A DNA stretch of 64,000 bases, taken from the NCBI RefSeq assembly GCF_006345805.1, contig NC_042997.1, forward strand, positions 53,506,001 through 53,570,000. Direction: 5' to 3'. How positions within the stretch are numbered: the stretch's first letter is position 1; the number at the start of each line of letters is the position of its first letter. Shown one piece after another: positions 20,108 through 43,697 of this stretch. The notes beneath the pieces were generated by a model. The model made no database searches. It was not told the origin of the DNA and saw only the letters and a list, made by a program, of their open reading frames with translations. This DNA comes from Octopus sinensis (taxonomy: Eukaryota). A program made the translations under genes and the position numbers.

Positions 20108-20225
20108 TCATCATCATCATCATTATTTTAATGTCTACTTTTCCATGCTTGCATAGGTCAGAGGTTATTGAGGCAGATTTTCTATAGCTGGATGTTCTTC
20201 CATGGAAAATCTTCCTCAAAAAACC
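20108..20225 (-). mobile_element. RTE-type terminal module with (GAT)n tail
   Basis: (tca)n then ttttccatgcttgcat...gaggcagattttctatagctggatg; reverse complement of the 38020-38120 module. Confidence 0.7.
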
Positions 20226-23340: not shown

Positions 23341-23833
23341 GACTTGTAGGGACATGGTATTTTGTTATGCAACCATAATATGCTACAAAGTATTTTAAAC
23401 GTTTTTATAAGTCAATACCATGTACTACTGTGTTAGCAGTGCACTTAAATCATGTGTTAAGGTCATCTGTACAGATTTTCTATATAAATTAAAGCCAGCA
23501 TTGATTTTATTATGATACTTTGTGTCCAAGATGTCAGATGTAAGCAAAAAATGGGTGATGGGTGTATATGCCATATTTTGGAAGCTTTTGCTCCTTCATC
23601 AGCACCCATCCAACCCATTAATTATCCACAAACTTATTGCTTAAATAACCACTACATACTGCAGTGTACTGTGATTGGATATACTAATTTACATACTAAA
23701 CACATCCCTGGAAGCTGGTATGTAAATATCTATGACTTGTAGGCACACAGTATTTCGTTATGCAACCATAATATACTGCAAAGTATGTTAAACATTTTTA
23801 TAAGTCAATACCATGTACTTCTCTGTTAGCAGT
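23341..23833. repeat. Pair of ~100-bp direct repeats (23341-23440 and 23734-23833)
   Basis: gacttgtagg...gttatgcaaccataatat...tttttataagtcaataccatgtact...gttagcagt in both. Confidence 0.85.
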
Positions 23834-24487
23834 ATAATAATTTGTTGTAGAATTATTGACCTTGAATTACATGTGTGTGCATATGTATGTGCAAAAATTT
23901 AATTTGTTTTATCTCAAACGTTGTCCTTTTCCTTGAATAGGCTGAGAATGACAAATAAATATGTAAAAATCTCTTCATATTGATAATTTAGGTGTCATAG
24001 TTATCTTTGTGACCATTATACATAAATCCCCAGAATCAAAGTGCTATGTTATAAAAATATCTATAATTACATTATGATTACTTTCATAAGCTCAGAATAT
24101 ATTATTGATATTGGAAAAGTAGCACAATTTCTTTTCTTTTAATATCAGTTGAAATGAACTTGTTTATTTCTTCTTTTTCTTTTGTTCTACTGTTGAAAAA
24201 AAAACCCTTTATAACTTTACAATACATTTTGAAATTAGAAAACATATTATGATTTAAGAATTACCTTAATATTTACATCTTTTCTTATTTGACTTTTGTT
24301 CTAATCTATTAAATTACTTTTCAATTCAATATCCATTTCCAAGGAAATTATTATTACACTTCCTTTTTTTATATTTCAATTAGATTTGTTTTACCTGACA
24401 CTAAATATTAATGTATCTGGTGTTCCTGTTTTCTACAACAATCTGGTCATAACCTTTTGGCTTTATTTAATAGTGTATATATAGTGT

Positions 24488-24850
24488 ATAGGCACAGGAG
24501 TGGCTGTGTGGTAAGTAGCTTGCTTACTAACCACTGCATGACACTTTGGGCAAGTGTCTTCTACTATAGCTCTGGGCCAACCAAAGCCTTGTGAGTGGAT
24601 TCTGTAGACAGTAACTGAAAGAAGCCCACCGTATATATACATATATATGTGTGTGTGTGTGTTTGTTCCCCCCACCATCACTTGACAACTGATGCTGGTG
24701 TGTTTACGTCCCTGTAACTTAGCAGTTCAGCAAAAGGGACTGATAGAATAAGTACTAGGCTTACAAAGAATAAATCCTGAGGTCAATTTATTCGACCAAA
24801 GGCATTGCTCCAGCATGGCTGCAGTCAGATGACTGAAACCAAAAAGAAAA
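24488..24850 (+). mobile_element. SINE family A with an internal deletion removing the B box
   Basis: ggcacaggagtggctgtgtggtaagtagcttgcttactaaccac joined directly to tgcatgacactttgggcaag; intact 3' part. Confidence 0.88.
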
Positions 24851-26247
24851 AAATAAGAATATGTATATATATATATACTATTATAAGTACTTACAACAAA
24901 ACTTTTGAATTTTTTTAGTATATTTCAAATTAGTGCACCATAGTGTTTAAATCAAGAACAAAATCAAAACAGTTTTAATATATATTCAGTACATTACAAT
25001 TTATTAAATTTCCAAAAGAAGGGTGAGATTTTCTTTAAAAAACTAATATGTAATTTTTTTTCTTAGTTTAAAATTTACATTTAATTTAGATAATATTTTC
25101 CAGAATGTTTGATCACTCTAGCGCTTAAAGGTACACAAAAATATGTACTGCTTCTCTGCAATAGTCAGTATTTGATTTTAGAATAAACAGATTGACTATA
25201 GGTAGGTAGTTGTTATTAACAAGATACTGCAGGATTTTCTGTGCACAAGTTCCAGAGTTGAACTCGATTTTGTTTCACTAAATCATCATCATTAGTAATT
25301 GATTGTTTGCATGTCAGTTTTCGTTTATAATTGCTTATGTTATTCTATTCTACTTCATTGTTAATATTTATGGTTTGTTCTAATGATGACTGTGTCTTTG
25401 AGAGCTTATATTGTTTTACTGCTAGGTTAAATGTAAAATATTTGAGTCATCTGACATAATGCCAATGTTATAGTCAAAATTGTATATCACAATTTTTCGT
25501 AATCTAGTGTTTGTATCATAACAGTAGTTGCAGAATCAGCTTCAAATTTCAATCCATTTTGAGTTGAAGGTATTGAGGCCCACTACCACATTGTTATTTT
25601 CGTGTCCATTTTTCCATGATAGTATATTGTTGTTTAGACTCCAAATCAATTCCTCTCAAGGCGATCTATGATCAAAGTCATTCTAACCACGACCTTCCCC
25701 CATTTTTGTCAGACACTATGCTATCTGTTGTAATATTTTTATTATGGTAGAGTGTGATTTCAGAGTGCTATTTCTAGCAGCTAGATTAATTGCATAAAAA
25801 ACCACGTGAAATAGGTTCTCAATATAGAATCTCACTGCCTATACCAATTCAATGTTATCATGTCTATGAGGTTTAACTTTCTGATTTCTAATCTGAACTT
25901 TTAAGTATTCTTTGTCTTACTTCTCCATCATTAACTTTGGCTAATTTTTACCTATCATTAACTAATCATAGAAGATGATTCATATTGCGTCAAAATTTTG
26001 TTTTGTATGTATGTATATGTGTGTGTACATATATCTATGTATGTGTGTAAGTGTGTGTGAACACGCATATAATAAATCCTTTTAGAAGTAGATGAAGCTA
26101 TAGATAATAGCATGTTGAATACGGGTTAAAAATAATCCTTAGCTGGAAGAAGTTAAAGCCTTCAACTTTCTTCATTCAAGGTTTTTTTTTAAACCAAATA
26201 TTCTACATGCTATTATATTATTTATAGCTTTATCTACTTATGAGTTC

Positions 26248-26248
26248 C

Positions 26249-26280
<32 letters not shown>

Positions 26281-27590
26281 GTTTAATGTCCGTCTTCCAT
26301 GCTAGCATGGATTGAACGGTTCAACCGGGGCCTGGGAAGCCAGGAGGCTGCACCAGACTCCAGTCTGATCAGGCAGTGTTTCTACAGCTGGATGCCCTTC
26401 CTAATGCCAACCACTCTGTGAGTGTAGTGGGTACTTTTTATGTGCCAGGGAAGGCTGGCAATGGCCACGATTGGATGGTACTTTTTACATGCCACTGGCA
26501 TGGAAGCCAGTCAAGGTGGTGCTGGCATCGGCCACGTTCGGGTGGTGCTTTTTACGTGCCACCGGCACAGGTATCACAATTACAATTTCCATTTGATTTT
26601 TATTTTGATGTTGATGTACTTGACTCAATAGGTCTCCTCAAGCACAGCAGGTCGCCCTAGGATCCAAGGTAAGCACAGCAGGCCATCCTGTGATCCAAGA
26701 TACTTTGGGTGGACTGGGGCTGCTATGTGAAGCTAGCGCAGGAAACAGCCATGAACTCATGTTATTTGTCGGGTCTTCGCAGTCACAGCATATCTCCGGA
26801 GGTCTCGGTCTTTCGTCATTGCCTCTGTGAGGCCCAATGTTCGATGGTCATGCTTGACCACCTCATCCCATGTCTTCCTGGGTCTACCTCTACCCCAGAT
26901 TCCTTCAACTGTTTGGGAGTGGCACGTCTTCACACATCTCTCCTCATCCATCCATAGTACATGACCATACCAGCGCAAACGTCTCTCTTGCATGCCACAT
27001 CCGATGCTTTTTATGTCCAGTATTTCTCTCAGGGCATTTACACTCAGTTGTGTGTGCACACTGACAGCACACATCCAGCAGATCATGCTAGCTTCATTTC
27101 TTTCAAGCCTACGCATGTCCTCTGCAGTCACAGCCCATGTTTCACTGCTGTGAAGCATGGCAGTTTGCACATATGTGTCGTACAATCTACCTTTCACTCT
27201 GAGCGAAAGACACTTTGTTGCCATTAGGGGAAGAAGCTTTCTAAACTTTGCCCAGGCTATTCTTATTCTAGTGGTGACACTCCCTGAGCATCCGCCTCCA
27301 CTACTAACTTGGTCACCTAGGTAGAGGAAACTATCAACTACTTCTAGTTTCTTCCCCTGGAGTGTGATTGAATCTGTTTTCTGAGTACCTGTGGTATCTA
27401 TTGCCCTGTACATCTGCCACACATGAAAGCTATCTTCTCGGTTAATTTCCTTTTGATGTTGCTGCACCTCTTATGCATTCATAGCTTACACTGGGTACAT
27501 CTTATGGAGCTTCTACCTACACCTTTTCTACAGATCGAGCAGGGCTACCTACCTGAGTGGGTGTGTGATGAGTTCGCCTTCCTACTTCAA
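26248..27590 (-). mobile_element. 5'-truncated RTE LINE with a 236-codon open stretch, 3' UTR and (GAT)n tail
   Basis: ORF 26757-27467: LEVVDSFLYLGDQVSSGGGCS...MLHSSETWAVT...QERRLRWYGHVLWM...GRGRPRKTWDEVV. Upstream Cys-rich PCSICRKGVGRSSIRCTQCKLW. The UTR runs into the shared terminal module and (CAT)n on + at 26248-26280. Confidence 0.95.
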
Positions 27591-27712
27591 TTAAAAACAA
27601 TTTATTTCTTATCTCTTATCAGAAATATAAAGTAAATTGCATTCAACAATGGAACTATAAATTCTCATGACATAAACAGCATATATATAGATATATACAT
27701 ACATACATACAT

Positions 27713-27780
<68 letters not shown>

Positions 27781-27782
<2 letters not shown>

Positions 27783-28049
27783 ATATTATCAGCCACATAT
27801 ACATAACGTACATGGATCGTGCATTAGCCAGTAGGCTGCGATTTGGTGGTTGCTTTTTCAAAGTGCCAGGTGTCAAAGCACCTGAAAGTCATGGACTGTA
27901 TATTTATATATATATATATATATATCAATATTATCAGCCACATATACATAACGTACATGGATCGTGCATTAGCCAGTAGGCTGCGATTTGGTGGTTGCTT
28001 TTTCAAAGTGCCAGGTGTCAAAGCACCTGAAAGTCATGGACTGTATATT

Positions 28050-28075
<26 letters not shown>
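27781..28075. repeat. Perfect tandem duplication (period 145 bp) of a unique ~123-bp segment embedded in (TA)n
   Basis: caatattatcagccac...gaaagtcatggactgtatattta starts at 27781 and at 27926; no differences seen. Confidence 0.95.
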
Positions 28076-28085
<10 letters not shown>

Positions 28086-28091
28086 TATATT

Positions 28092-29356
28092 CAGGGTTTA
28101 GACAAAATAATGGAAACACCTTAAAATTTCAAACAAATTTATTTTGATATGGGGTAGGACTGCCTTTGGCAGTAATTACAGCTTGAATTCTATATGAGGT
28201 ATAGACTCATACAAAGTTTGAATTGTTTCCAAAGGAATTTTTATCCATTCTTCTGCTAAAACAGTCTCCAGTTCTTGTAGTGATGATGGTTGAGGATATC
28301 GACTCCTTACTTGTTTTTCTAAAATACACCATAAATGTTCAATATTATTTTTGAGTTCTGGGGACTGTGGTGGCCAGATAAGATGTTCAACTCGACCAGA
28401 ATGTCCCTCGTGTCATTCAGTTACAACTTTAGCTGTGTGAATTGGTGCATTATCATCCTGAAAGACTATGTTTCCCTCCGGAAACAGTTCCGCAACCATA
28501 GGATAAATTTGATCAGATAAAATGCTTAAACAGTTTTGACTATTAATTCTGCCATGATGGGAAACCATTGGACCGGCTGATTTCCAAGATATAGTCCCCC
28601 AGATCATCACAGATCCTCCTCCATGTTTATCAACTGGAAGAAGGCAGTCTAGGTCAAATGCTTGTTTTGGCTGTCTCCACACGTATACTTGGCAGGTGGT
28701 TGGAAATAGGATAAAGGATGAGCTGTCTGAGAAAATATCATTATTCCACTGCTCTAGAAACCAATTCTGTAGGTTTTTACTCCACTCTAAATGCTTTGCA
28801 ATGTTTGTTTTTAAGAGTAGTGGTTTTCTGATTGCAGCCCTACTGTGAAATCCAGTTTTGTGCAGCTCCCAGCGAGCAGTTTTTTGTGGAAACTGGGCTC
28901 ACAAAGTGGTCATTAAGCTCTGCAATAATTTTGGGAGCTGTACTTTTGTGATCCTTTCTAACAATTTGTATAAGAGTCCGATAGTTCCTCCCTGAAAGTT
29001 TTGGTTTTCTTCCAGAGTTTTATTTCGATGAGGAGGTTTTTCCCTGTTTCTCAAACGCTGTCATTACTTTCGAGTACTTCTTGATTTACCAAACATTTTA
29101 GCTGTTTTCATTACCCTAGCACCTGTCATACGAGCACCAACAATTTGACCTCTTTAAAAGTCTGATAGAGCTGTCATTTTACTGAGTTTTAATTACCTTT
29201 TTCTGATGATATCTGAAAAGAAACAGCAATTTTAGCTAAACATATTAAGCAACACTAATAATAAATAAAAAAAAACAAGCTTTTGATGGTTTTATAGATA
29301 TTTCAAAATGATGATGCTATGATGCTAGGTGTTTCCATTATTTTGTCCAACCCCTG
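28092..29356 (-). mobile_element. Full-length, mutated Tc1-family (DD34E-type) DNA transposon
   Basis: 30-bp TIRs cagggtttagacaaaataatggaaacacct (28092-28121) and its near reverse complement (29327-29356, 2 mismatches), followed by TA. Transposase starts at ATG 29177 (MTALSDF*RGQIVGAR) and includes KHGGGSVMIWG, FQDDNAPIHTAK, WPPQSPEL..IEHLW. Confidence 0.96.
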
Positions 29357-30679
29357 TATATATATATATGAATAAAATATTGATGTTGGCAGAATAAACT
29401 ACATTCAGCTCAGCAGACTCTTAAGGCAGGAAGTTTAGAGTAAACCAAGCATGAAGTTTCAATTTCTCACTGAAGCCATTTCACTTCTAACAGAACCATT
29501 TACTAATTACTTTTCAAAAATATATGAGTGTCATAACTTGCCATTTCTTTTCAAATAAAAGTCAAGGGCTTTGTGCTTGTGTAAGAAACCATTATAAGGC
29601 TGTAGCATTTTAAATGATATACGGTGGTTATTTTTTCTGTTTTCCCTTTCCTGCTTGTTTTAGATTTATACTTTATACTTTGGATATCCTGCATTAATGA
29701 CTGTTTGAACATGGACTGTCACCTGAATTTTATAAAAATGGTTTTATGTAGCTGAATTGTTTATTACTATAGCTCGAAGTTTATTCATGACTAGCTTATT
29801 GATATTTAAGCAATCAAAACTGATTTTCTTCTCTTATTACTTATGTCTTTCAGAAATATCTTGTATACACCTGAAATTTTCCTTATAAATACCTAATACA
29901 TCTAAATTATTGCAATTATAGACAATTATTTTATGGAAATATTTTATCAGTGCATTTTCTAAAATATAATTTTGAAATTGGGAAGGCTAGCATTAATTGC
30001 TTACTTCTAGAAAAGAAGACAAGACAATGTGTACGGTGTTGTAGAAAAAACAGTTGGCTGTGACAATATTCATTACTTTGGTAAGAGCTTGTTAAAGCTG
30101 AAAAGTAAATACTCTAAGCCAACATCAATTCTGACAAATGAATTCAATTAATCCAACATTAATTGATGTTTAATTCAATATCTTTCTTTGTATTACTTTG
30201 AACGCAAATGTTTTCAAAAATACAATTGGGATTAATGTATAAATAAAAAATTTTAATTTGATTTTTCAAAAATTAGATACCTTTATTTTTGATTTATTAA
30301 TTAGAGTATTTTTGTTCAGTTTGAAAAGTATTGAAACAACATATAGAATATTCCTGATAGTGTCAGGAATATTTACTTTATTCTTAATCATTATTTCAAA
30401 TTTACACACACATTCTTAATAATATTACAAAACTATATGATACCATCTACCATTAATACATTAATATTTAGAATGAAGGATGTTTTGAGTCCGTAGAATA
30501 TTTTTATATTCAATGTTTTATATTAGATAAAACATAGATATCGGAATACATGATGACTGCCTGTCTTGCTTCTTTAGAGATTGAAACTAGGCAAAAGTCA
30601 AGCATTTATCATATTTATATATTTTCCATTTGCCTCTTTGATCCATTGCATCACCAGCTTTTTAATCTCCCATTTAAAA

Positions 30680-30715
<36 letters not shown>

Positions 30716-33342
30716 TTCTGAAGAAAATGTAAGCAGTGTTTTTTATTATTTCTCTTTTACCATTGGCTGAAGTGAATTGGATAATACAGAAATGTTCACT
30801 CCATTAAGAAAATATCACACCTTTGTTTATTCATCAAAAAGATGGCTACCTTTCTTTCAGAGCAACTTTTGAAATATGGTCTAGTTGATGAGAATGATAG
30901 GCACATCACAAGGAATTATTTTTTGACATGCAGCAAGCTTCACTTAATCACACCAAAATATTTCAAAAAGCCTTTTGGTGTCTACCTAAATCAAGCTTAT
31001 TAATGGACTTTGACAATTTGAAACAAATCCTTGCGTTTTATCTTTGGTGAAATATTTAAAAACATTTTGCTTTCATAGAAATAGAGTTTAATAAAAAGAA
31101 ATAGTTATTCATTACATTACCTTTGGTCATTCACCACAAATCTTTCTTGACTTTTACTAATACATATCTCTGTGGATGTTGAGTTGGTTTCCGTACAATT
31201 TTAGTATCCATAATTCAGCTTAAGTCAGGAGTCATCCTGTTTGTACTGCGTTATTTTAACTATTATTATCTAACTTTTTCTTTGTTCATTTAGATAATTT
31301 TCTATTTATGCAATTCTGCAGCATTCTTATTTTAACACAAAAACTTCCCTGCCTGCTAAATTTTCCTTATATATCTATATTATTCGTGGAGCTGAAAGTA
31401 AAGTTAATTTATCAAATTCTTACACCAATAAACGAAAGATGATTATCAGCAACAATTGAAAATAGTTTATAACTGTGTGATACATCATAAATAGCAGAGA
31501 AGACATGTGTATCCTCTGAGATGACTTGATTCTACCAATGAACTTAACTATTTATTGTATTTTTCAAAAACATACTTAGGTTTAGTCCTATATACTTTTC
31601 CCTTTCTACAGTTCCCTACCTCAACCAATATTCATACAATGTGTAGCTAACAGAAGATTTCTTGTTCTTCCATTTTTAGTCCCCGAATTAATCTCCCCCT
31701 TTTTCAGCTCCAATTAATTATTAACATACCTATTTACAATTGGTTAGGTCCAAGTATCACCAGTTCACCCAGTGTCTACTCCAGTTCCACCACTGATGGG
31801 GCACCCTATAATTGCTACAAAATTGATTCCCAGAGTCTAAAAAGTGCGTCCCACCCCAAAGGTAAAATTTTTTTCCAATTTCCATTGCTAAATGCATCTA
31901 CTTACTGCTGATTACTTTGAAACATTAGTTATTAATATGTTTGAAAAAGGTGGAGAGAGTGAGGATAAAAGCATGTGGTATGATGTCTCTTGTCTTCACT
32001 CCTTTAGCCCAGACTCCCACCCCACCTTGTGTCTATCTATTGAAAGAAAAATAACATTAATTGATTGCTACAGCTTTTTGACTTTGTGTCATTTATTTCC
32101 CTTTGTTCATTCTTTTCTTAATCTAGTATCACTATTAATTTGGCTTCATTAATCTGCCTTAAATTATTCAAGTAATGCATTAGATACATTAAGCTTTGAA
32201 GTATGGTGATTCTTTATATATCACTAAAAAACTAATTTGCTTTTATTCTGCTTCCCTCTGTGAGCTAATTCTTTTAATTTTGCTTTTGAAACATATTTTT
32301 AATCAGGTGTAAAAAAAAACAAAACCCAAATTTAGATTTGTGTGACTTTAAAATACACAGCAGTGTCAGAAATACTTTCAGAATTATTTTGGTTAAAATA
32401 AGACAAAATACTTATATCTATGCAAGCATAATTTATTTATTAATAGATTTATCACTGAATAACTTTATTTTACTTTTAGTTAATGTGTATTTATGAGTGT
32501 GTTTGTGAGAGAGAAAGAGAAGGAGATAGTCAAAGAGAGAAAGAAAACTAGTGTGTGTAAATATGAAGTAATTGCATATATGCTGTATGTGTATACATGA
32601 ATATACTCTATTCGCCCTACACATCTATACATCATTTTTTTTTTCTGTACTCTTTCTTCAGTTGTACCTTTGGAAAGTTGGATTTCATTAAGAATTGTTG
32701 AAAATAGTTTTGATGTTTGAGTAAACTCAATTTAAGATTATACTTCAGTTCTTGTAAGAGTCTTTATAGAAACCCCATAATTACCAAAAAGTAGTGTCCT
32801 GACATATTTCTTGTTTAGGAATGGTCTCAGTTTGGAATGGATTGTTTATTTAACTATTTTTTGTGACTGTTTTAAGAAAGGAAATTCTAAAGATTCTAAT
32901 GAACTTATATTGGTATAAAATACAACAGCATCAGCCTATACGCATAATTAGCTCAACTACATTTGTACACTTACAGATCTTCAAACAAGTACATTAATAT
33001 TACCTTATATTCTCTTTAGAAATCAAGTTAAGCCAAAATTGCTTGCAACCTTATCATTTTACTTTTTAATTACTCTATTTTTTCCTTTCTATTTTCTTTT
33101 CTTTTCTTATTTTTTCTGTTATATTCATTTGCTATAAACTATTATTTTTACTTAGGTTTCTGTAAAAATTCTCACTATATCACTTTTTCTTTTATATTTT
33201 ATTTTCTGTTATTTAATCTGTTTTATTATTTTTTATCCCCCCACCACCGCTTCTTTTGTTTTGTTAATTCTTCTCTTTCTAATTTAACATTTTTATTTAT
33301 TTGTTTTTATATTCTACTGATAAATAAATATATTTCTTGTAG

Positions 33343-33369
33343 ACGCTTGGTCCCAATTTCAAATTCCAG
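33343..33369 (+). CDS. NR2C1/2: Candidate 27-nt alternatively spliced microexon of the NR2C gene
   Basis: ttcttgtAG|ACGCTTGGTCCCAATTTCAAATTCCAG|GTAAGT. Length is a multiple of 3, open in the phase-1 frame, and no AG dinucleotide occurs from 33156 to 33340. Confidence 0.6.
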
Positions 33370-35271
33370 GTAAGTTGATGTTTCGCAATTTTCCCAGTTA
33401 GGATTTATCTTTGGAAATGTGAAGCTGTCCAGTAGCACCGACATTAATAGTATTTTTAATAAAATAGCTCAAGATTATTCAACATTTGAAAATATTTGCA
33501 TAATAATAATAAACCTTGCTCAACAAGGCTGTTGATTATTTTTATATTCAAACTGATTCTTTTACTAAAAATGTGATGTAATTAACACATGATCCACTAC
33601 ACTTCCTAAAGACTAATTGTTCTTCATAATTATTCCAGTTCTTCCTCTCTGCATCTTATAAGTGTAATGTTAAGAAATAAGATTTTCTTACTTCTCTTGC
33701 TATTTTCTGCTGCAGTTTGGCAAGATTTCTTATCATAGTTGATTGCTTGGATATATTTTACACTTCTTATTCTTAATATATTATAAAGGAGATTTTATAT
33801 TTTCCTGTGTTTAACTATATCGAATAGATTTGTGGTTGGTCTCCTCTAAACACACACACACATGCACACTCATACACACACTTTCTTTCTCCATATATGT
33901 GTGTGTGTATTCTTATTTCCTTGTGTATTTTGTGTGTTTATTCTTGCATGCATATTAGATTACATTATTTGAGAGTCTTAAGGACTCTATCTTTTACATA
34001 GTGACACATTGAAAGTTGTATTGGAAAATGTGTGTGTTTGCGTATGTATATATGTATGTGTATTTGTGTGTATTTACATGCACATACACATGTGCACACA
34101 AATTCACCCATACACACTCATGCACATGCATGTGCACACAAACCATTTGTGCTTTGCTGAACCAAATGCTGGTGTGGTCATCTGGGTTATCCAAATAGAC
34201 TTCCTCTAACACAATTTGTTATCATTAGGTTTTGAGTTATAATTAAAAGTTGCTGCGTGGAATAATTTTAACTAAACCTTAACTTTGTTGGTTTTCTTAA
34301 AGAACTGCTCTGTATTTTTGCATGCTGAACAATTTCTAAATATCTCTATTAGCGGAAGTGAAATCTAAAGAGATGTTGTCTTTGTTTTATCATGAATGTG
34401 ACATGTCTGTGAATTAAAGATGTGAAAACTTCTCAAGAAATATCAGTTATAATCATGTAACAAAAATACAGCTGTGATTAAGAGATAGTGCTTTTAGTAG
34501 TTCCTAAATCCAGACAGTGTAAGTTCAGGTTTTAGGATTATCTTTTGCTCAAAATAACTGAGAAAAGAACAGTTATCTGATATTGAATGTGTCAGTGGAG
34601 TAGAATTTTTGAAGATTATACTAATGATAGGCTCTTGAATAAGAAAGCTTTTGGAAATTTCCTAGTTGTGAAAATAGTCTATTAATACTTGAGAATATAA
34701 TGTCTCATGTTTCAAGTTATTTAGCATCAACCCTGCTCTGATTGAACTGTCTTGTGATCAAAGAGGTTCCAGCTGTGGCCAAGCTGTCTTGCGATAAAGC
34801 ATATCCAGTTCTGTTGTTATATATTGAGTTCTATTTTTTTTAAAGATGCTTGGATGTGATTTTGAGGGAGATTTGACTGCTATTTCTTGTGAGTTCAGTA
34901 ACCATACAGAAGCCATATCATTGACTTGTGTGATTGAAGGTTGTTAATCAAAGAAAGTCTACATGAGTGGCACAGAATAAGTTACAACTGATAGCTAAGT
35001 TTTTTTTCATTTTGAAAATCTTGCAAACAGCTTTACATTTAATGGACTTACTGTGATCAAAACAGCTTTACATTTGCAAGTCTTGCAGTGATCAAAACAG
35101 CCTGCCATTTGCTGCAGATATCTGAAGTTGCATAACTTATCGAATATATACTTTATGTAAAATGATATTAAATACAGTATACAGTTTTGAAGCTGTGTGT
35201 GTGTGTGTGTTTTGTGAAGTAAACAGAAAAATAGATCTCAAAAGATGAGTATATACATACATATTACATAT

Positions 35272-35356
35272 ATGGGCAAGTGTCTTCTACTATAGCCTCG
35301 GGCCGAACAAAGCCTTCTGAGTGGATTTGGTAGACGGAAACTGAAAGAAGCCCATC

Positions 35357-35422
<66 letters not shown>

Positions 35423-35630
35423 ATATGTTTGTGTGTCTGTGTTTGTCTTCCCAACATCACTTGACAACCGATGCTGGTGTGTTTACGTCCCCATAACTTA
35501 GCAGTTTGGCAAAAGAGACCGATAGTATAAGTACTAGGCTTACAAATAATAAGTCCTGGGGTCGATTTGGTCAACTAAAGGTGCTGCTCCACCATGGATG
35601 CAGTCAAATGACTGAAACAAGTAAAAGCGT
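35272..35630 (+). mobile_element. SINE family A, 5'-truncated
   Basis: tgggcaagtgtcttctactatagcctcgggcc...(TA)n...gcagtcaaatgactgaaacaagtaaaag. Confidence 0.88.
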
Positions 35631-35763
35631 AAAGAGTGTGTATGTATATATATATATATGTATATATTGTTATTAATTGGCAAAAGTTACAGAATAATTC
35701 AAGTTTGGTTCATTCCATTGCATGAAACTCTCAGCCATTGAGTCATTCTGTAACTTCTGCTGA

Positions 35764-35828
<65 letters not shown>

Positions 35829-36300
35829 ATCATCATCATCATCATCATTTAGCGTCCGTTTTCCCTGCTAGCATGGGTTGGACGGTTCAACTGGGGTCTG
35901 GGGAGCCCGAAGGCTGCACCAGGCCAGTCAGATCTGGCAGTGTTTCTACAGCTGGATGCCCTTCCTAACGCCAACCACTCCGAGAGTGTAGTGGGTGATT
36001 TGATGTGCCACCGACACAGGTGCCAGACGAGGCTGGCGAACGGCCACGCTCCGATGGTGTTTTTATGTGCCACCGACACAGGTGGCAGACGGCCACGCTC
36101 GGATGGTGTTTTTATGTGCCACCGACACAGGTGCCAGATGAGGCTGGCGGACGGCCACGATCGGATGGTGTTTGTTACGTCCCCAAAGCACGGAGGCCAG
36201 TCTATGCGGTACTGGCTACGGCCACGTTCGGATGATTTTCTTGTGTGCCACCGGCACTGGTACCACAAAGATACAAATTCCATTGATGTTCATCTATTTT
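35829..36300 (-). mobile_element. Young RTE 3' module with 4-5 tandem ~50-65-bp subunits
   Basis: (CAT)n, then ttttccctgctagcatggg...gatgcccttcctaacgccaacc, then repeated gtgccaccgacacaggtg...cggatggtgttttt; CpG-rich. Confidence 0.88.
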
Positions 36301-37052
36301 GATTTGTTTTGATTTGATTTGATTTGATTTTGATTATATATATATATATATATACAAAATAGAATAAAGTGATCAGTCAACATGTGAAATCACACTGGAT
36401 CATACCTACAAAAAAAAATTATAGAAGTTTATATAAATATTACATTTTTTTGATAGTCATGATGAGGTGACTGGTGGTGGTAATTTTATTCAATGTTGCA
36501 TGGACTTTACACAGCTTCTATAATTTTTGTATGTATGATCCAACATATTGATTAACACAGCACTTCTACTCGTTATGGAAACAATCGTAACTGATGAATA
36601 AAGATGATACTGTCACCTTTATTCCTTTGATTAGTATATCATATTTTCTGTGATGGATGCACTACTTCAATAAATTGGAACTTTTCCTGGATTTTCACAC
36701 AAACACGCACACACTCTCTTGAAATACAAACAAAGTTTAGCAGCAAGAAAAGCATCTGATTGTAAAACAATGCCTCAGTAATATGTATTCTTCCAACCCG
36801 ACTGAATATACATGCATAATACATAAATGTGTGTGTGTTCACATATATAAGATTAATAAGGGTATATTAAAAACCATACAAGATAAAGTCTTGATTTTTA
36901 AAATTTATCTTGTATATATTTCTTCTTCATATTTGTTGTACTTGCCAATGGCCACGCTTAGTTTATTTCTCTGAGCACTTTTTTGTTTCATTTAAGCAAA
37001 TACCCAGGTCATAATTGTGTTCTGTCTGCTAGAATTAAGGTAGAGTAACAGC

Positions 37053-37093
37053 TGTGCTGCTGATGCCTACTGAGGCAGAAACATATGCCCACA
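37053..37093 (+). ncRNA. Degenerate minimal type-I hammerhead ribozyme fold (probably inactive)
   Basis: TGTG-CTGCTGA-TGCC-TACTGA-GGCA-GAAA-CATATG-CC-CACA: stems I, II and III in the correct order; the core differs from CUGANGA/GAAA/NUH at two positions. Confidence 0.55.
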
Positions 37094-37317
37094 CGTTTCT
37101 TTTGTCTTCAGACAATTGAACTGTATTAGTGGTATGTCAGTTTATGAGAATTTTTGATTCATTAGGTGATGCTCCCTTCTAAATTTGAGTTAGTTCCAAT
37201 TGGCATCAAGCAAAGAAAGGTTGACTGGGAAAATAGTTTTTGGGTGTGGCAGATGCACATGGGCAATAAACACTGAAGATGTACAGAAAACAGATTCTAT
37301 TACATCGTAAAAAAGCT

Positions 37318-38125
37318 TTTGCTACCTAGGCAACCAAGTCTGTAGTGGGAGTGGTTGCTCTGAGAGTGTAGTGGCTAGAATAAAAATATCCTGGGCAATG
37401 TTCAAGGAGCTCCTACCTATGCTGGCAACTAAGGGCCTCTTACTCAGGATGAAAGGTAGACTGTATGATGCATGTGTGTGAACTGCCATGCTCCATGGCA
37501 GTGAAACATGGGCCATGACTGCTGAGGACATGTGTCGGCTTGAAAGAAATGAAGCTAGTATGATCCACTGGATGTATAATGTCAGTTTGAATATAAGACA
37601 GAGTGTAAGCACCCTGAGAGAAAAGTTGGGCATATAAAGAATCAAATGTGGTGTGCAAGAGAGACGACTGTGCTGTTGTGGTCATGTGTTACGTATGGAT
37701 GAGGACAGCTGTGTGAGGAAATGCCACTCCCTAACTGTGGAAGAGGTAGACCCAGGAAGACATGGGATGAGGTGGTGAAGCATGACCTTTGAACATTGGG
37801 CCTTACAAAGGCAATGACAGGAGAACAAGACCTTTGATGATATGCTGTGGTTGAGAAGACCTGGCAACTAAAGAGAGATCACAGCCATGCATGTCCGGCC
37901 CAGTAAATAGTACCCCTGATACGTCGGGTGATATGATATGCTTGAGAAAACCTGTTGAGTCAAGTAAAACCAATATTGTAGTATTGGGGAAACATTACCT
38001 TGCTTGGAAAAGGTAAGACTTGGCAACAGGAAGGGCATCTGGACATAGAGAATCTGCCTCAATAATTTCCATCCAACCCATGCAAGCATGGAAAAGTGAA
38101 TGTTAAAAATGATGATGATAATGAT
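37318..38125 (+). mobile_element. 5'-truncated RTE LINE 3' end with UTR and (GAT)n tail
   Basis: YLGNQVCSGSGCSESVVARIKISWAMFKELLPMLATKG...MLHGSETWAMT on +. The listed minus-strand ORFs here are its antisense frames. Confidence 0.92.
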
Positions 38126-39159
38126 ATATAATGTATATTTCTACCATTTCCTTCTCTCTTCAACCTTTGATGGTATCAATAGAGCATTTACATTTTCAAC
38201 AAGGCTTTTATAGTTGGGATAGAGTTAAAGTGTAGGAAATTTATATTTAAAGCAATGGTGTGTTTAATGATGATGATGATGTTTTCAGTTATAAATACAC
38301 GGTAGAAGGTAAATTAATACAGACGTTAATTAGATACACTGAGATGTATCTATCAAGTATATCTAACTTCAATATTTAGATAACCATGGCTATATGTCCT
38401 CTCCAATCTAATCTAGGCTCATAAACATATATCCATGTCTGTATCAGATATTTAATCCCTCTCCTGCTGAAAAAAAGAACATAAAAACCTAACTATATCT
38501 GAGATCTTTTGGATCTAAATTACTCAATAGATATATAATGTTAAATCTTAACATTTATATATCCTTTAAAAATTAATCAATTTTCTGTAAATTATGCCTA
38601 TCTCTTGAAATTCTTTAAGTGCTGATCCCAAGATACCTTGCGAAAAATAAACACTAGTTTTAGAGCTTAAAGCTTTAAACTTTCCACATTTACAGCAACC
38701 ACATATAACACTTCTACAACCACTTTCTGCCACCTGTCTCTCCAGTCGCACACTTTTTTATGGATATATTCTAGTTTAAAAAGCAATGATAATAATAATG
38801 GGACTGGGATATCTGATGAAATTTGCTCTGTTTATAAAATCAATCTGTTTTTGTATCTGTTGTCAAATATCAATTCTTTAGCATATTAAAAAATTTTTTT
38901 TTGCTATTCTTTCAGTAGGCCAAGTTATAAACCTACTTTTTGAAACCTATTTTTGATTTTTGATTGAAGCAATTTCCCATTGCTTCCCATTTGTTTTTGT
39001 GTAAACATTTAAGGTTTTGTAGTTATTTTACTTCTGAATTAAACTTTCTCTCGGTCAAATTGAACCAAATCAGTTTGCCTGCAAACTGCTGCCACTGTAG
39101 ACACCCAAAGACACCTAAATTTATATCTAAGTAATAGATAAATTTCATTTTAAGCATGA

Positions 39160-39742
39160 TAATAATAAAAATAATAGTTTCTTACATAGAAACAAAGTTA
39201 GAAAGATGAAAGTCAAAGTTGACTTTAGTGGAATTTGAACTTGGACTGTAAAGAGCCAGAACTAATGCTGCAAAGCATTTTGTCTGATGCTCTAATACTT
39301 CTGCCGACCCACTGTTCTGAAAATGACAATTTCTCAGAGAGACACAGTGCTATAAATTTTAGGATGAGGAGGAGGTTAGTCAGTTAAATTAACCACAGTA
39401 CATGTCTGGTACTTTATTTTATTGGTAGGATTTTGAATTCAGATTGTAAAGAACCAGAACAAATGCCACAAAGCATTTTGCCTGACACTCAAATGATACT
39501 GTTAACTCACCACTTTTAGTAATCATAATAATAATAATCCTTTCTAGTATTAGTCACAATTTTTGGGGAGGGGACTAGTTGATTACATCAACCCAGTGTT
39601 TCTCTGGTATTTAATTTATCAACCTGAAAGCATGAAAGGCAAAGTTGACTGTGACAGAATATGAACTCAGAAGATAAAGATTGATGAAATGCTGCTAACC
39701 ATTTTACCTGGTGTGCCAACGGTTCTGCCAGCTCACCACCTT
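39160..39742 (-). mobile_element. Three head-to-tail Meta-like SINE copies separated by (AAT)n
   Basis: Repeated aaagttgact...gaatttgaact...aagcattttg...ctgccagctcaccacct at about 39160-39318, 39325-39517 and 39520-39742. Confidence 0.75.
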
Positions 39743-39769
39743 AATACTAATAATACATACATATATATA

Positions 39770-40150
39770 CATACACATGCAACCTACTGCAATTTATCAT
39801 CAAATGAAAGGATGAGCCTATATGAACAGAAGGCTATGCATGGATATGTTATTAGAAAGCTCTGTGATGATAGTAACATCGATCATCAAAGTAGTTTATC
39901 ATGGACAAATAGCCAGAATACTACCTCCCACTTAGAAGGGTATGCATTTGCAATCCAGGTGCAGGAAATATCAACCAAGTACCTGATGCACAAAAGGGAT
40001 AGAGATGCAAGAAAAGCAGAAAAATGTGACAACCGATGCAGACTGTGGAGTTCACACTGGAGATATCACTCACATCATAAGCAGTTGTCCGAAAATGTCA
40101 TCATGGTATTATCTACTGATGAGACATGATGTAGCTAGGACACTCTTGTG
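39770..40150 (+). mobile_element. Fragment of an RLE-type (R4/Dong-like) non-LTR retrotransposon, zinc-knuckle region
   Basis: KAMHGY...SSLSW...HLEGYAFAIQVQEISTKY...CDNRCRL, then after a frameshift DITHIISSCPKMSSWYYLLMRHDVART (CRLC..HI.S.C and RHD motifs). Confidence 0.8.
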
Positions 40151-41445
40151 ACAAGAAGGACATCCAGTTGTAAAGTAATGGACTCAGTAATAAAATTGTT
40201 TAATTCTTACTAACATGGTAAAATGAACATAAAAATGAATGAGCAAAAAGAATGAAGAAATGCATACATATTATGGAGGTAGGGTAAAATCCAAGCTGTG
40301 CTCTCTTGAAGAACATCTGCTTATTCCAGTATTACAACCTATGTATGTAGATGCATTGATGCAAGGTACAGATTAAAGTTGAATATTCTGGAAATTTTAT
40401 TTGTTTCTCAGTCTGAAGAATTTCAAATAGGAAATTTCTTCCATGTTTATGTAACATTCTAAACATTGTAATTCCTGTTAGCAAATGAAATATGCGTAAT
40501 GGTAAATAAAAAATACCAAGTCAATTTTCCTACAGCTGAGGATAAGCATTATCTTATGCTTTGAAACTTTAAGTACCATGGAATTTGAATCAAACTGTTT
40601 TGATCTATACATGTAACTCCTAATAAATGTGTTGAGTACCCTTCTTTCATTTGCACATTCACTCATGTATATTTATATGTGTGTGTGTGTGTGTGTTTGT
40701 ATTATGTGCATATGTACACATTTGACAGCATGACAGAGACAAAACAAATATAAGAGAGAGAAAGAGTAACTGACATGCAGAGGATCTAGGACTGCTTGTA
40801 TTCCTTGTAAGTGCTGTGTTGTCTGTATATATATTGATTTTTGTTTAATCTGTATGTGTGTGTATGTGTGAAAGGATGCAGTGAAAGCAGACATGTGAAA
40901 TAGAGCTTGAAGACAGCTGGATGCATTTAGAGATTTGGCTCCTATTTTTAGCATGTTGAGTGTATGTGTGTGTTTTTCTTATGTATTGTTCTTGTTGTTT
41001 AGCTCCAGTCAACCATAATGTCTTGTGCAGATATTATGATGATATTTACTTTACTTGTAACCATCTCATGGTTTCCTATTTGCAAGAGACCTAGGGTCAT
41101 ATATGTGGTTGTTGTGTTGCATTATCTGTTAGTGTCAATTTACCAAGGAAATACATAAAAGCAAGTTTGTATGGATATACTATCGTGAAGACTGTAGACA
41201 TGAATATGTGGTGCATGCAAACATGCATGTGGGCCATGCATGCATACACATAGATATTCATATGACAAACTTTCTATAGTTACTAGCAGCCAATTCGCTC
41301 ACAAGACATTAGTTAGCCCAGGGTATAGAAGATATTTGCCCAGGGTACCATGCTGTGAGACTGATCCCAAAACCATGTGGTTGTGAAGCAGACTTGTGAG
41401 CTATATATCCATGTCTGCATTTAGCCATGCCTTAGTCTTATATAT

Positions 41446-41762
41446 GTGGAGGCACAATGGCCCAGTGGTTAGGGCAGCGGATTCGCAGTTGGAGGATCGC
41501 GGTTTCGATTCCCAGACCGGGCATTGTATGTGTTTATTGAGCAAAAACACCTAAAAGCTCCACGAGGCTCCAGCAGGGGGGGGGGGGGGCGTGGCGACCC
41601 CTGTTGTACTCTTTCGCCCCAACTTTCTCTCACTCTTTCTTCCTGTTTCTTGAGTAACGTTGCAATGGACTGGCATCCCGTCCAGCTGGGGGGAACACAT
41701 ACGCCCCAGAAACCGGGACCATGAACCTGGCTAGGCTTGAAAAGGACTCATAAATTAAAAAA
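41446..41762 (+). mobile_element. Young tRNA-derived SINE of a distinct family (family C) with 13-bp TSD
   Basis: Head ggaggcacaatggcccagtggttagggcagcgg...ggtttcgattccc; V-domain-like gcaatggactggcatcccgtccag; TSD tagtcttatatat at 41433-41445 and 41763-41775. Confidence 0.92.
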
Positions 41763-41864
41763 TAGTCTTATATATAGATATATCTACCATTTACAAAGCT
41801 CTCAGTTCTTGAGTCATTTTTATTAACTTATATAAGTATATGTGTGTATAGGTGCAGATGTGGT

Positions 41865-42262
41865 TATGTGGTTGAGAAGTTTGCTTCTCAACCATATAGT
41901 CTTGAGTTCAGTCCTACTTAATGGTACCTTGGGCAATGTCTTTGGTTGCCTAGAGAAAGTCCTTGAGAAAGCATTTTGTAGATGGAAACTAAAAGAAGCC
42001 TGTCATGTATGTGTGTGTGTATGAATTTATGTGTACTCTTTCTTGACATGGTTATGGACAAGCATAACTGTTATACAAGTGATGTTGTTCACTTCCAGTC
42101 TTCTGTGAAAAACATGTCTCGCCATTAGGAAATATTACCTTGCTTGGAAACAGGTAAGGATTGATGACAGGAAGTGCAACAGGTCATAGAAAATCTGCGT
42201 CAACAAATCCCTCCTGATCCATGCAAGCATGGAAAATTGAACACCAAATGATGATGATGATA
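41865..42262 (+). mobile_element. tRNA-headed SINE with RTE-derived 3' tail (family B)
   Basis: Family-A-like head (gtggttatgtggttgagaag...gagttcagtcc) joined to attaccttgcttggaaacaggt...ccatgcaagcatggaaaa...(GAT)n, as in the LINE at 37318-38125. Confidence 0.8.
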
Positions 42263-42298
42263 TATATGTATGTATGTATGTATATATATATATATATA

Positions 42299-42859
42299 TG
42301 AGGGGGAAGTCAAAAATTATCTGCACTTTTGCCATAACATATCTCTATTATTGACACATGTGTGCTTATAGTTGGTACTATTGTGGTTATGTGACCAAAG
42401 TTTGAACCTGATCACACCATTTTTCTTTCTAGTTTTACAGTGTAAGCATGGCTGCTCCACTAGCAATGTGCACCAAAGAAGAACATCTCTCAAGTTTGTT
42501 GAATCTTCCTGTCAGTGATGGAGGTTGACGGGCATCCTGTTCCCTCTTTGTGCATCATGCTTGTCTAGCTGCTTTTAAACTTCTTGATCCACTCATACAT
42601 GGTACTTTTACGCAGTAGTGCACTGTCCCCATATTGTGCTAAAAGCCTCCGATGTATTTCAGCACCTGACACATCTTTTGACCAGAGAAATCGGACCACT
42701 GCTCTTTGTTAAAGCCAGAAAGAGAAAGGGTGCAATAAGGCTCAAACTTTGATCATGCAACCACAATAATACCAACTATAAGCTCGCATGCGCAGATGGC
42801 AGTGTGACAATAATAGATATGTTATGGTGAAAATGCGGATAATTTTTGACTTACCCTTG
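42299..42859. mobile_element. Non-autonomous mariner derivative made of two inverted left ends
   Basis: TA-flanked TIRs tgagggggaagtcaaaaattatctgcac and gcggataatttttgacttacccttg. MAAPLAMCTKEE on +, and QRAVVRFLWSKDVSGAEIHRRL...YEWIKKFKS on -. Confidence 0.88.
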
Positions 42860-42890
42860 TATATATATATATATATATATATAGCCACAC

Positions 42891-42931
<41 letters not shown>

Positions 42932-43452
42932 TTTTTATATTATATAGAGGGCATTATTACACATAAATGCCACACGCTAGAAGGGACTTTCAAAGTCATT
43001 ACTACCAAAAATAAACGAATCGGACCGAATGCAGCTCTCGAAGCAAGACATTTAAAAACAGAATTTAGCTCCATATATATATATATGTATGTATGTATGT
43101 ATATAACCAATATTTCATGCACAGACAGAGATTAGAAAATCTAAGATAAATTTAGTGTAGTTATCCCACAGTTTATACAACCTTTGATGTAGAAAGGAAA
43201 TAAATGTAAGTACAGCTTGTTATTCCCTTTGCATTCAGAAAGGCACTACAAGATGTATTTACATCTCTTTATTTTCCGCAATGTGCTATAAACTTGAGAC
43301 TAACTGTATTAAATTTATCTTGTGTGTGTGTGTGTTACTGATAGTGTGATTCTATACTGAAAACAGAGTTTCCTTCCATCAATCAATCAATCATTGCTTT
43401 ACCATCCATTTTTCCATGCTTACATGTGTTGGACATAGTTTGTCAAGGAACA

Positions 43453-43697
<245 letters not shown>

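What the first reader, a model, noticed from the sequence alone, without database searches (positions are those of the whole stretch)
33033..33375. Hidden 27-nt frame-preserving microexon that would insert 9 residues into the TR2/TR4 T-box
Seen: tatttcttgtAG|ACGCTTGGTCCCAATTTCAAATTCCAG|GTAAGT (33343-33369) has a full-consensus donor, a length divisible by 3 and no stop in the phase-1 frame. Inclusion changes GMRSE-S-VQQERKP to GMRSE-YAWSQFQIPA-VQQERKP. Upstream there is no AG for 185 nt (33156-33340) and only one AG in about 300 nt of U-rich sequence, the hallmark of an extended AG-exclusion zone. The surrounding ~1 kb lacks recognisable TEs. Known: short T-box insertion isoforms are described for invertebrate RXR (gastropods, crustaceans), and the T-box affects DNA binding and dimerisation. 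Inference: a regulated, possibly neural, NR2C isoform with altered response-element specificity; I do not know of one described for NR2C.
Basis: partly seen in the sequence, partly recalled or inferred. Interest (0 to 1): 0.85.

Follow-up and report, generated by a model that had tools for sequence, protein, structure and literature searches.

The report
Unproven 27-nt exon candidate, NR2C intron
A 27-base stretch deep inside a 52-kb intron of a mollusc TR2/TR4-type nuclear receptor gene looks like a small in-frame exon, but nothing shows it is ever used, and it is most likely a chance look-alike.

Summary
Exon A (403-582) ends GMRSE+T, exon B (52770-52918) begins CT-GTT (S-VQQERKP), and the phase-1 intron is 52.2 kb. 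At 33343-33369 lies TAG|27 nt|GTAAGT, which is open in frame. The gene is NR2C-like: its best solved relative is the human TR4 DBD-CTE.

The support for a real exon is weaker than claimed.
- The "AG-exclusion zone" follows from base composition (57% T, 4.9% G; shuffles give P about 0.12).
- The acceptor scores -0.6 bits on a rough PWM, against 9.5 and 10.8 for the two real exons.
- No UGC lies within 200 nt upstream.
- The same intron holds other in-frame, stop-free candidates with better acceptors.

The only full-consensus donor in 128 kb (both strands) sits 27 nt after the longest AG-free tract, a rare conjunction (about 1e-3 per window).

I could test neither expression nor conservation: no close relative and no cephalopod transcript was reachable. 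Every full-length or genomic relative I could see has the uninserted GMRSE-S/A-VQxERKP junction. The apparent inserts in database proteins are introns read through by gene callers.

My estimates are about 70% unused pseudoexon, 15-20% genuine cassette microexon and about 5% recursive-splice site. RNA-seq junction reads would settle it.

The parts
403..582 (+). Exon A: second half of the nuclear-receptor zinc-finger DNA-binding domain, ending GMRSE plus the first base (T) of a split codon. Its donor is AAT|GTAAGT.
   Evidence: Pfam zf-C4 E=1e-26. Best solved relative is human NR2C2/TR4 DBD-CTE 7XV6, 115.9 bits against 103.9 for RXR-alpha.
583..52769 (+). Phase-1 intron of 52,187 nt between the core DBD and the C-terminal extension (T-box).
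   Evidence: The same intron position and phase are seen in L003, where the intron is only 234 nt and contains nothing similar to the 27-mer.
33033..33340 (+). T-rich, G-poor low-complexity tract (57% T, 4.9% G, 73% pyrimidine) with a single AG. It includes a decayed (TTTTC)n repeat at 33080-33117.
   Evidence: It is the only 308-nt stretch of the window with T>=0.55.
33279..33283 (+). CTAAT, a branch-point-like motif 61 nt upstream of the candidate acceptor.
   Evidence: Motif scan. It matches the CUAAY consensus quoted in PMC8797185. Its use is not shown.
33317..33321 (+). CTGAT, a branch-point-like motif 23 nt upstream of the candidate acceptor.
   Evidence: Motif scan. Its use is not shown.
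33341..33342 (+). Candidate acceptor AG (context cttgtAG|A), weak by PWM.
   Evidence: -0.6 bits against 9.5 and 10.8 for the real exons.
33343..33369 (+). Candidate 27-nt cassette exon ACGCTTGGTCCCAATTTCAAATTCCAG. It is frame-preserving and open in phase 1, and would replace S with YAWSQFQIPA. Its GC content is 0.44, against 0.21 and 0.29 in the flanks.
   Evidence: There is no evidence of use.
33370..33375 (+). Candidate donor GTAAGT. Together with the preceding CAG it forms the only [AC]AGGT[AG]AGT 9-mer in the window on either strand.
52770..52918 (+). Exon B: CT+GTT..., encoding (S)VQQERKPPDSEKK...SEIE, the C-terminal extension (T-box) and hinge.
   Evidence: Homologous exons appear in P0121/L002 (92% aa identity) and in full-length relatives P0126, P0129 and P0154.

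Best explanation
The 27-mer is most likely a pseudoexon, a chance juxtaposition of three things. These are a consensus 5'-splice-site-like 9-mer (CAG|GTAAGT), an in-frame TAG 27 nt upstream, and a neighbouring T-rich low-complexity tract that is partly a decayed TTTTC microsatellite. All lie inside a very long AT-rich intron. On this reading the normal mRNA joins exon A (403-582) directly to exon B (52770-52918). The product carries the canonical GMRSE-S-VQQERKP junction seen in every relative examined, and the 27-mer is removed with the intron, or at most included at noise level. What is shown: the sequence anatomy, the compositional origin of the AG-free zone, the weak acceptor, the competing candidates, and the absence of the insert from all reachable proteins. 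What is inferred: that the exon is not used.
For: 1. The AG-free zone needs no selection. G is 4.9% in the tract, 3.3 AG are expected and 1 is seen, and shuffles reach the observation in 12-13% of trials. A TTTTC repeat lies inside the tract.
2. The acceptor region is poor: A-rich at -11 to -20 and -0.6 bits, against 9.5 and 10.8 for the two genuine exons.
3. The same intron holds other in-frame, stop-free candidates with good donors and better acceptors: 46340-46366, 26651-26668, 14801-14818 and 49521-49550. Nine such candidates have donors of at least 9 bits on the sense strand, and 4 on the control strand.
4. A perfect-donor, in-frame candidate appears in 8-9% of simulated introns.
5. No UGC lies within 200 nt upstream and no GCATG within 570 nt. 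UGC close to the 3' splice site is a listed feature of SRRM/eMIC-dependent microexons (PMC8797185).
6. No protein with the insert was found among about 5.8 billion clustered sequences or 1.84 billion representatives. Full-length relatives P0126, P0129, P0154, P0162 and P0004 all have the uninserted junction.
7. A relative with a 234-nt intron at this position has no such exon.
Against: The conjunction is unusual. The only full-consensus donor 9-mer in 128 kb lies 27 nt after the longest AG-free, pyrimidine-rich tract of the window. Of 48 AG-free zones of at least 100 nt, no other has a donor above 7 bits within 60 nt. Homogeneous simulations give at most 0.25% for a donor plus at least 100 nt of AG-free sequence.

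Several features fit a real microexon. A weak 3' splice site, a long AG-free zone, a long pyrimidine tract and a CUAAY branch-point motif are hallmarks of eMIC-type microexons. The 27-mer's GC content (0.44) matches the real exons (0.45, 0.41) rather than its flanks (0.21, 0.29). It sits in the largest stretch of the intron with no intra-window repeats. The homologous intron of mollusc RXR does hold a real T-box cassette exon.

The absence from protein databases carries little weight, because no cephalopod transcript of this gene is in them at all.
Confidence: 0.72

Rival explanations
1. The 27-mer would be a genuine, regulated cassette microexon, perhaps tissue-restricted or neural. A distal branch point (for example CTAAT at -61) and the long U-rich tract would recruit U2AF or PTB-type factors. 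The weak TAG acceptor would be offset by the perfect donor. Inclusion would replace Ser (human TR4 S186) with YAWSQFQIPA. That would push the C-terminal-extension residues that read the minor groove and contact the partner's second zinc module nine residues away from the core DBD. Cooperative binding to direct repeats would then change.
For: The anatomy and frame fit. The donor is the best in the window and follows the longest AG-free tract, and the conjunction is rare under the null. The architecture matches 4 of the 5 listed eMIC-microexon features. GC content is exon-like. Mollusc RXR has a cassette exon at the homologous A|V position of the T-box (PMC3774650). TR4 CTE residues 188-193 matter for DNA binding and dimerisation: R191A lowers binding about 60-fold and S189A about 12-fold (PMC9943680). 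The window's protein aligns to that structure residue for residue.
Against: There is no expression or conservation evidence of any kind. The AG-free zone is compositional. The acceptor is far weaker than the real ones. No UGC, GCATG or downstream YCAY motif is present. No relative shows an insert, and the apparent inserts in database hits are introns read through by gene callers. Extreme features such as a perfect 9-mer and a 185-nt AG-free zone are also rare among real exons, so they raise the odds only modestly (inference).
Confidence: 0.17
2. The CAG|GTAAGT at 33367-33375 would be a recursive-splice (ratchet) site that helps remove the 52-kb intron in steps. Exon A would first be joined at the CAG, which regenerates GAAT|GTAAGT, the same donor hexamer as the original. 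That regenerated donor would then be spliced to exon B, leaving no trace in the mRNA.
For: As an acceptor, the CAG|G at 33367-33369 scores 6.8 bits, far better than the TAG at 33341. The regenerated donor equals the authentic one. On the sense strand, 3 of 7 intronic AG|GTRAG sites (12149, 33368, 46365) have acceptors of at least 6.4 bits, where 0.6 are expected (binomial P=0.019). None of 4 antisense sites does. From my own knowledge, recursive sites with this consensus are known in very long Drosophila introns.
Against: A TAG lies 27 nt upstream, between any plausible branch point and the CAG, and would normally be used first. No branch-point-like motif lies inside the 27-mer. The pyrimidine tract just before the CAG is interrupted by A runs. 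The enrichment is post hoc and rests on a rough PWM typed from general knowledge. To my knowledge, recursive splicing has not been described in cephalopods.
Confidence: 0.06

Closest known systems
Pseudoexons (splice-site-flanked intronic segments that are not spliced) in long metazoan introns
   Same: It has AG and GT consensus flanks, a short length, a location deep in a very long intron, no evidence of use, and several comparable rivals in the same intron.
   Different: The donor is a perfect 9-mer, and it follows the longest pyrimidine-rich AG-free tract of the window. That is a better-than-average imitation.
[quoted passage not shown]
   Same: The location matches: the phase-1 intron after the core DBD, between KRE-A and VQEER in RXR and between GMRSE-S and VQQERKP here. 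In the scallop a 60-bp cassette exon does the job.
   Different: Those isoforms were cloned as cDNAs, and this one is only a prediction. The receptor subfamily differs (NR2B against NR2C). There is no sequence similarity between the inserts.
SRRM3/4 (eMIC)-dependent neural microexons (PMC8797185)
   Same: The length is 27 nt or less. It has a very weak 3' splice-site region, a long AG-free zone, a long pyrimidine tract, a CUAAY-type branch-point motif, and a strong donor as in mammals.
   Different: No UGC motif lies near the 3' splice site (none within 200 nt). There is little alternating UCUC (2 CTCT). The AG-free zone is explained by base composition. Neural inclusion is untested.
Zero-length recursive splice sites (ratchet points) of long Drosophila introns
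   Same: It has a juxtaposed YAG|GTAAGT, lies in an intron longer than 50 kb, and regenerates the upstream exon's donor.
   Different: An AG lies 27 nt upstream inside the would-be exclusion zone. The pyrimidine tract is imperfect. No intermediate reads are available.
Human TR4 (NR2C2) DBD-CTE on DR1 (PDB 7XV6; PMC9943680)
   Same: The window's DBD and extension align end to end, including SVQxERKP with the TR2/TR4-specific proline.
   Different: No insertion isoform at this position is reported there. Nor did my literature searches find one for NR2C.

Membership tests
NR2C (TR2/TR4/HR78) nuclear receptor gene | C4 zinc-finger DNA-binding domain | tested here: met
   Pfam zf-C4 E=1.2e-26 on the exon A ORF.
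NR2C (TR2/TR4/HR78) nuclear receptor gene | Closer to TR4/TR2 than to other NR2 members, with the SVQxERKP extension including the TR2/TR4-specific proline | tested here: met
   Best PDB match is 7XV6 NR2C2, 115.9 bits against 103.9 for RXR-alpha and 94.3 for COUP-TF1. Pro193 is conserved only in TR2/TR4 according to PMC9943680. Full-length relatives P0126 and P0129 share the hinge.
NR2C (TR2/TR4/HR78) nuclear receptor gene | NR2C-type ligand-binding domain | not testable with these tools
   No further exon of the gene was recognised in 52919-64000. The LBD exons lie outside the window.
Genuine cassette microexon | AG...GT flanks, length a multiple of 3, open in the phase of the flanking exons | tested here: met
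Genuine cassette microexon | Splice junction reads or cDNA containing the exon | not testable with these tools
   No cephalopod transcript of this gene is in the searchable protein sets. No protein contains YAWSQFQIP.
Genuine cassette microexon | Conservation of the exon and its splice sites in orthologous introns | tested here: inconclusive
   Only distant relatives were reachable. The first 10 kb of the L001 intron has no match. L003 has a 234-nt intron without it. JGI metagenome scans gave 0 hits and then 1 chance hit inside what looks like dense, bacterial-type coding sequence.
Genuine cassette microexon | Acceptor comparable to the gene's other exons | tested here: not met
   -0.6 bits against 9.5 and 10.8 on a rough PWM.
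eMIC/SRRM-dependent neural microexon architecture (PMC8797185) | Weak 3' splice-site region and long AG exclusion zone | tested here: met
   The zone is no longer than the local composition predicts.
eMIC/SRRM-dependent neural microexon architecture (PMC8797185) | UGC motif close to the 3' splice site | tested here: not met
   No TGC in 33143-33342. The nearest is at 33130, about 210 nt upstream.
eMIC/SRRM-dependent neural microexon architecture (PMC8797185) | Long pyrimidine tract rich in UCUC, and a strong CUAAY branch point | tested here: inconclusive
   The tract is 73% pyrimidine but mostly U, with 2 CTCT, 8 TCTT and 15 TTCT. CTAAT lies at -61.
Zero-length recursive splice site | Juxtaposed YAG|GTRAGT that regenerates a donor after the first step | tested here: met
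   CCAG|GTAAGT. The junction would read GAAT|GTAAGT, as at exon A.
Zero-length recursive splice site | AG-free pyrimidine tract between the branch point and the recursive AG | tested here: not met
   A TAG at 33340-33342 lies 27 nt upstream. The tract before the CAG contains A runs, and its acceptor scores 6.8 bits.
T-box insertion isoforms of NR2 receptors (as in mollusc RXR) | Insert at the intron between the core DBD and the T-box | tested here: met
   The position is E|S/A|V in both.
T-box insertion isoforms of NR2 receptors (as in mollusc RXR) | Isoform demonstrated as mRNA | not testable with these tools
   See the cassette-microexon row on junction reads.

The most novel reading that the evidence does not exclude
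The 27-mer is a real, lineage-specific (cephalopod) cassette microexon. It inserts nine residues between the core DBD and the C-terminal extension of the single TR2/TR4 orthologue. This would be the first T-box/CTE insertion isoform of an NR2C receptor. It would parallel the mollusc RXR T-box isoforms and would retune cooperative binding to direct-repeat elements in particular tissues.
Probability: 0.15. Interest if true: 0.55.

Novelty: not a real feature. Interest (0 to 1): 0.25.

Why it matters
If the exon were used, it would show that alternative splicing at the DBD/T-box boundary extends to the orphan TR2/TR4 subfamily. So far this device is documented in invertebrates only for RXR. It would also give a simple handle for asking how spacing between the core DBD and the C-terminal extension sets response-element and dimer choice, because the human TR4-DR1 structure shows those residues are critical.

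If it is a pseudoexon, as I think more likely, the case is a useful caution in three ways. In AT-rich, G-poor cephalopod introns, long AG-free zones arise from composition alone. A single perfect donor is expected about once per long intron. And inserts seen in metagenome-style protein predictions at intron positions are introns read through by the gene caller, not isoforms.

Tried and rejected
1. I searched about 5.8 billion proteins with the inclusion isoform and with a junction-plus-hinge query at E<=10. No protein carried the insert. Several hits have extra residues at the junction (P0002, P0003, P0007, P0014, P0012, P0015, P0001, P0008, P0006). These begin C-K or C-E (T|GT AAG or T|GT GAG) and end in A (G|CT), so they are short introns read through by prokaryote-style gene callers, and I rejected them as evidence for isoforms.
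2. I looked up the window's own DBD-exon ORF; it is not on record.
3. I fetched the only cephalopod-like contigs, L001 and L002. Only the exons align to the window (80% nt), so they are too distant to compare introns. The 27-mer is absent from the 10 kb of intron held, and no perfect-donor candidate occurs there.
4. I tried to walk further along the L001 contig, and to catch any ORF overlapping a conserved microexon, with one chimeric query. Nothing scored.
5. Two degenerate-pattern scans of the JGI metagenome contigs gave 0 hits, then 1 chance hit inside what looks like dense, bacterial-type coding sequence.
6. An exhaustive HMMER search of 1.84 billion representatives with exon B found full-length relatives, all uninserted.
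7. Rfam and tRNA scans of the window found nothing.
8. Literature searches for NR2C T-box isoforms or cephalopod microexons found nothing relevant.
9. I considered a transposon origin for the region. There is no intra-window repeat, but single-copy relics cannot be excluded.
10. I considered a vertebrate-style recursive exon and rejected it, because the exon's first bases (ACGCTT) would not regenerate a donor.
Full report
THE GENE AND THE JUNCTION

Exon A (403-582) encodes [59 protein letters not shown] plus one base (T), followed by GTAAGT. Exon B (52770-52918) begins CT GTT CAG CAA GAA AGA AAG CCA, giving S-VQQERKPPDSEKK...SEIE, and is followed by GTAGGG. The intron between them is 52,187 nt and phase 1.

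Exon A is a C4 zinc finger (Pfam E=1e-26). The spliced product matches the human TR4/NR2C2 DBD-CTE structure 7XV6 best, at 115.9 bits, ahead of RXR-alpha (103.9) and COUP-TF1 (94.3). It carries the SVQxERKP extension with the proline that PMC9943680 says is specific to TR2/TR4.

The same intron, at the same position and phase, occurs in a metagenome-derived relative, L003. There it is only 234 nt (GAAT|GTGAGT...TTTCAG|CTGTACAG).

THE OBSERVATION

The candidate is cttgtAG|ACGCTTGGTCCCAATTTCAAATTCCAG|GTAAGT at 33343-33369. It is 27 nt long and open in the required phase, and inclusion would give GMRSE-YAWSQFQIPA-VQQERKP. AG dinucleotides lie at 33031, 33154 and 33341 only, so 185 nt are AG-free and 308 nt hold a single AG. 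No part of 28.1-35.3 kb is repeated elsewhere in the window.

IS IT MORE THAN CHANCE?

Four points weaken the case.
- The tract 33033-33340 is 57% T and only 4.9% G. With that composition 3.3 AG are expected and 1 is seen. Shuffles reach the observation in 12-13% of trials, and GA is just as rare. Part of the tract is a decayed (TTTTC)n repeat. The "AG exclusion zone" is thus a by-product of a T-rich low-complexity tract, not evidence of selection against AG.
- The 20 nt before the AG are A-rich. On a rough PWM typed from general knowledge of metazoan splice sites, the acceptor scores -0.6 bits, against 9.5 and 10.8 for exons A and B. The donor scores 13.0 bits, against 7.4 and 10.3.
- The intron holds other in-frame, stop-free candidates with good donors and better acceptors. 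They include another 27-mer at 46340-46366 (T10 tract, ATCAG|GTAAGG), 26651-26668, 14801-14818 and 49521-49550.
- A perfect-donor, in-frame, open candidate arises in 8-9% of Markov-simulated introns of this length.

One point strengthens it. [AC]AGGT[AG]AGT occurs exactly once in the window on both strands, and it lies 27 nt after the longest AG-free tract. Of 48 AG-free zones of at least 100 nt, no other has a donor above 7 bits within 60 nt. Simulations give at most 0.25% for a donor plus at least 100 nt of AG-free sequence. I put the conjunction at about 1e-3 per window under the null.

COMPARISON WITH KNOWN MICROEXON ARCHITECTURE

PMC8797185 lists the features of eMIC/SRRM-dependent microexons in flies and mammals. 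They are an extremely weak 3' splice-site region, a long AG exclusion zone, UGC close to the 3' splice site, a long UCUC-rich pyrimidine tract and a strong CUAAY branch point.

The candidate has the weak acceptor, the long zone, a long but mostly U tract, and CTAAT at -61 (CTGAT at -23). It has no UGC within 200 nt. It also has no GCATG within 570 nt and no YCAY downstream. It therefore resembles that class in the features that composition alone can supply. It lacks the UGC motif, which from my own knowledge is the direct SRRM4 binding determinant.

EXPRESSION AND CONSERVATION

These are the decisive tests, and I could not run them.
- Two searches of the 5.8-billion-protein collection found no protein with the insert. 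They also found no cephalopod transcript of this gene at all. The only close hits are genomic ORFs from distant cephalopod-like contigs: P0006 on L001 and P0121 on L002.
- Only the exons of those contigs align to the window, at about 80% nt. The 10 kb of intron available in L001 contains nothing like the 27-mer.
- A chimeric query, meant both to walk along that contig and to catch any ORF over a conserved microexon, returned nothing.
- Degenerate DNA patterns scanned against the JGI metagenomes gave nothing but one chance hit in what looks like bacterial-type coding sequence.
- The exhaustive representative search found full-length relatives (P0126 735 aa, P0129 680 aa, P0154 708 aa). All have the plain GMRSE-S/A-VQxERKP junction.

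Many database proteins appear to carry inserts at exactly this junction. They start C-K or C-E and end in A, which is what an unspliced GTAAG/GTGAG...AG intron of 3n length translates to. They are gene-caller artefacts, not isoforms.

WHAT INCLUSION WOULD DO

This section is inference from a solved structure. Aligned to human TR4, the insertion falls between E185 and V187. Immediately downstream lie Q188 and R191, which read the minor-groove shape (R191A lowers binding about 60-fold). Next come S189, R191 and K192, which hydrogen-bond to R168 of the partner DBD (S189A lowers binding about 12-fold), and P193, which packs on the partner's second zinc module. Nine extra residues here would very probably change cooperative DR1 binding.

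The position is also homologous to the A|V site in the T-box KREAVQEER of mollusc RXR. There a 60-bp cassette exon and a 12-bp acceptor shift generate the T(+4), T(+20) and T(+24) isoforms (PMC3774650).

A THIRD READING

As an acceptor, the CAG|G at 33367-33369 scores 6.8 bits, and splicing exon A to it would regenerate GAAT|GTAAGT. On the sense strand, 3 of 7 intronic AG|GTRAG sites have acceptors of at least 6.4 bits, where 0.6 are expected (P=0.019). None of 4 antisense sites does.

This hints at recursive-splice-like sites in a 52-kb intron. However, the TAG 27 nt upstream should be used first, and the statistic is post hoc and rests on a rough PWM.

WEIGHING

This section is inference. 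Chance gives the full conjunction about 1e-3 per intron of this kind. But a real microexon would also rarely show both a perfect 9-mer donor and a 185-nt AG-free zone, perhaps 1 in 500-1000. The features therefore multiply the prior for a real in-frame microexon in such an intron only a few-fold. I take that prior as a few per cent, raised somewhat by the RXR precedent.

I put the unused pseudoexon at about 0.7, a genuine cassette microexon at 0.15-0.2, and a recursive site at about 0.05. If the exon is real, it is a new member of a known kind (T-box insertion isoforms, microexons), not a new mechanism. RNA-seq junction reads and alignment of orthologous cephalopod introns would settle the matter quickly.

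Noticed in passing
window 46340-46366 (donor at 46367): A second 27-nt, in-frame, stop-free candidate lies in the same intron: tag|TAGAAAAATCAGTTTTTTTTTTATCAG|GTAAGG. Read as a juxtaposed 3'/5' splice site (T10-ATCAG|GTAAGG), it has the best acceptor score (8.4 bits) of all AG|GTRAG sites in the intron.
   Followed up: partly
window 49461-49580: A GC-rich island sits in the AT-rich intron. It has the strongest acceptor-like site of the intron (cctcctttttctctactgccccctcag|G, 14 bits), followed by a 30-nt in-frame open segment and a weak GTGGGG donor. Its nature is unknown.
   Followed up: no
window 12149, 33368, 46365 (sense strand of the intron): Of 7 sense-strand AG|GTRAG sites, 3 have good acceptor scores (binomial P about 0.02), against 0 of 4 on the antisense strand. 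This is a faint hint of recursive-splice-like sites in the 52-kb intron.
   Followed up: partly
window 28413-28682 (- strand): An 89-aa ORF (...GGGSVMIWG...FQDDNAPIHTAKVV...) looks, from my own knowledge, like the DDE region of a Tc1/mariner transposase. Pfam gave no hit at E<=0.01. It shows that single-copy transposon relics escape the intra-window repeat test.
   Followed up: partly
window 10014-10440, 55830-56057, 58185-58596, 60415-60662 and others: A short interspersed repeat family has up to 13-14 matches within the window, often next to (TA/CA)-type microsatellites that translate as THTHTH/IYIYIY. No tRNA-like gene was detected.
   Followed up: no
window 28121-35273: This is the largest stretch of the intron (7.1 kb) with no intra-window repeat, and it contains the candidate. 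Other gaps are 4.5 kb or less.
   Followed up: no
window 52695-52735: A (CAT)n/(ATT)n microsatellite lies about 35 nt upstream of the acceptor of exon B.
   Followed up: no
protein P0009 (source 'merc', no contig): This NR2C/HR78-like fragment reads GMRSD-CKNDTKDLYKT-VQSERKP. The insert begins like a read-through donor (C-K), but it ends in T rather than the A expected from AG|CT. It could be an alternative 5' splice site or an unspliced mini-intron in an unidentified marine eukaryote.
   Followed up: no
L003 1163-1396: The orthologous phase-1 intron in a metagenome-derived relative is only 234 nt, about 220-fold shorter than in the window.
   Followed up: yes
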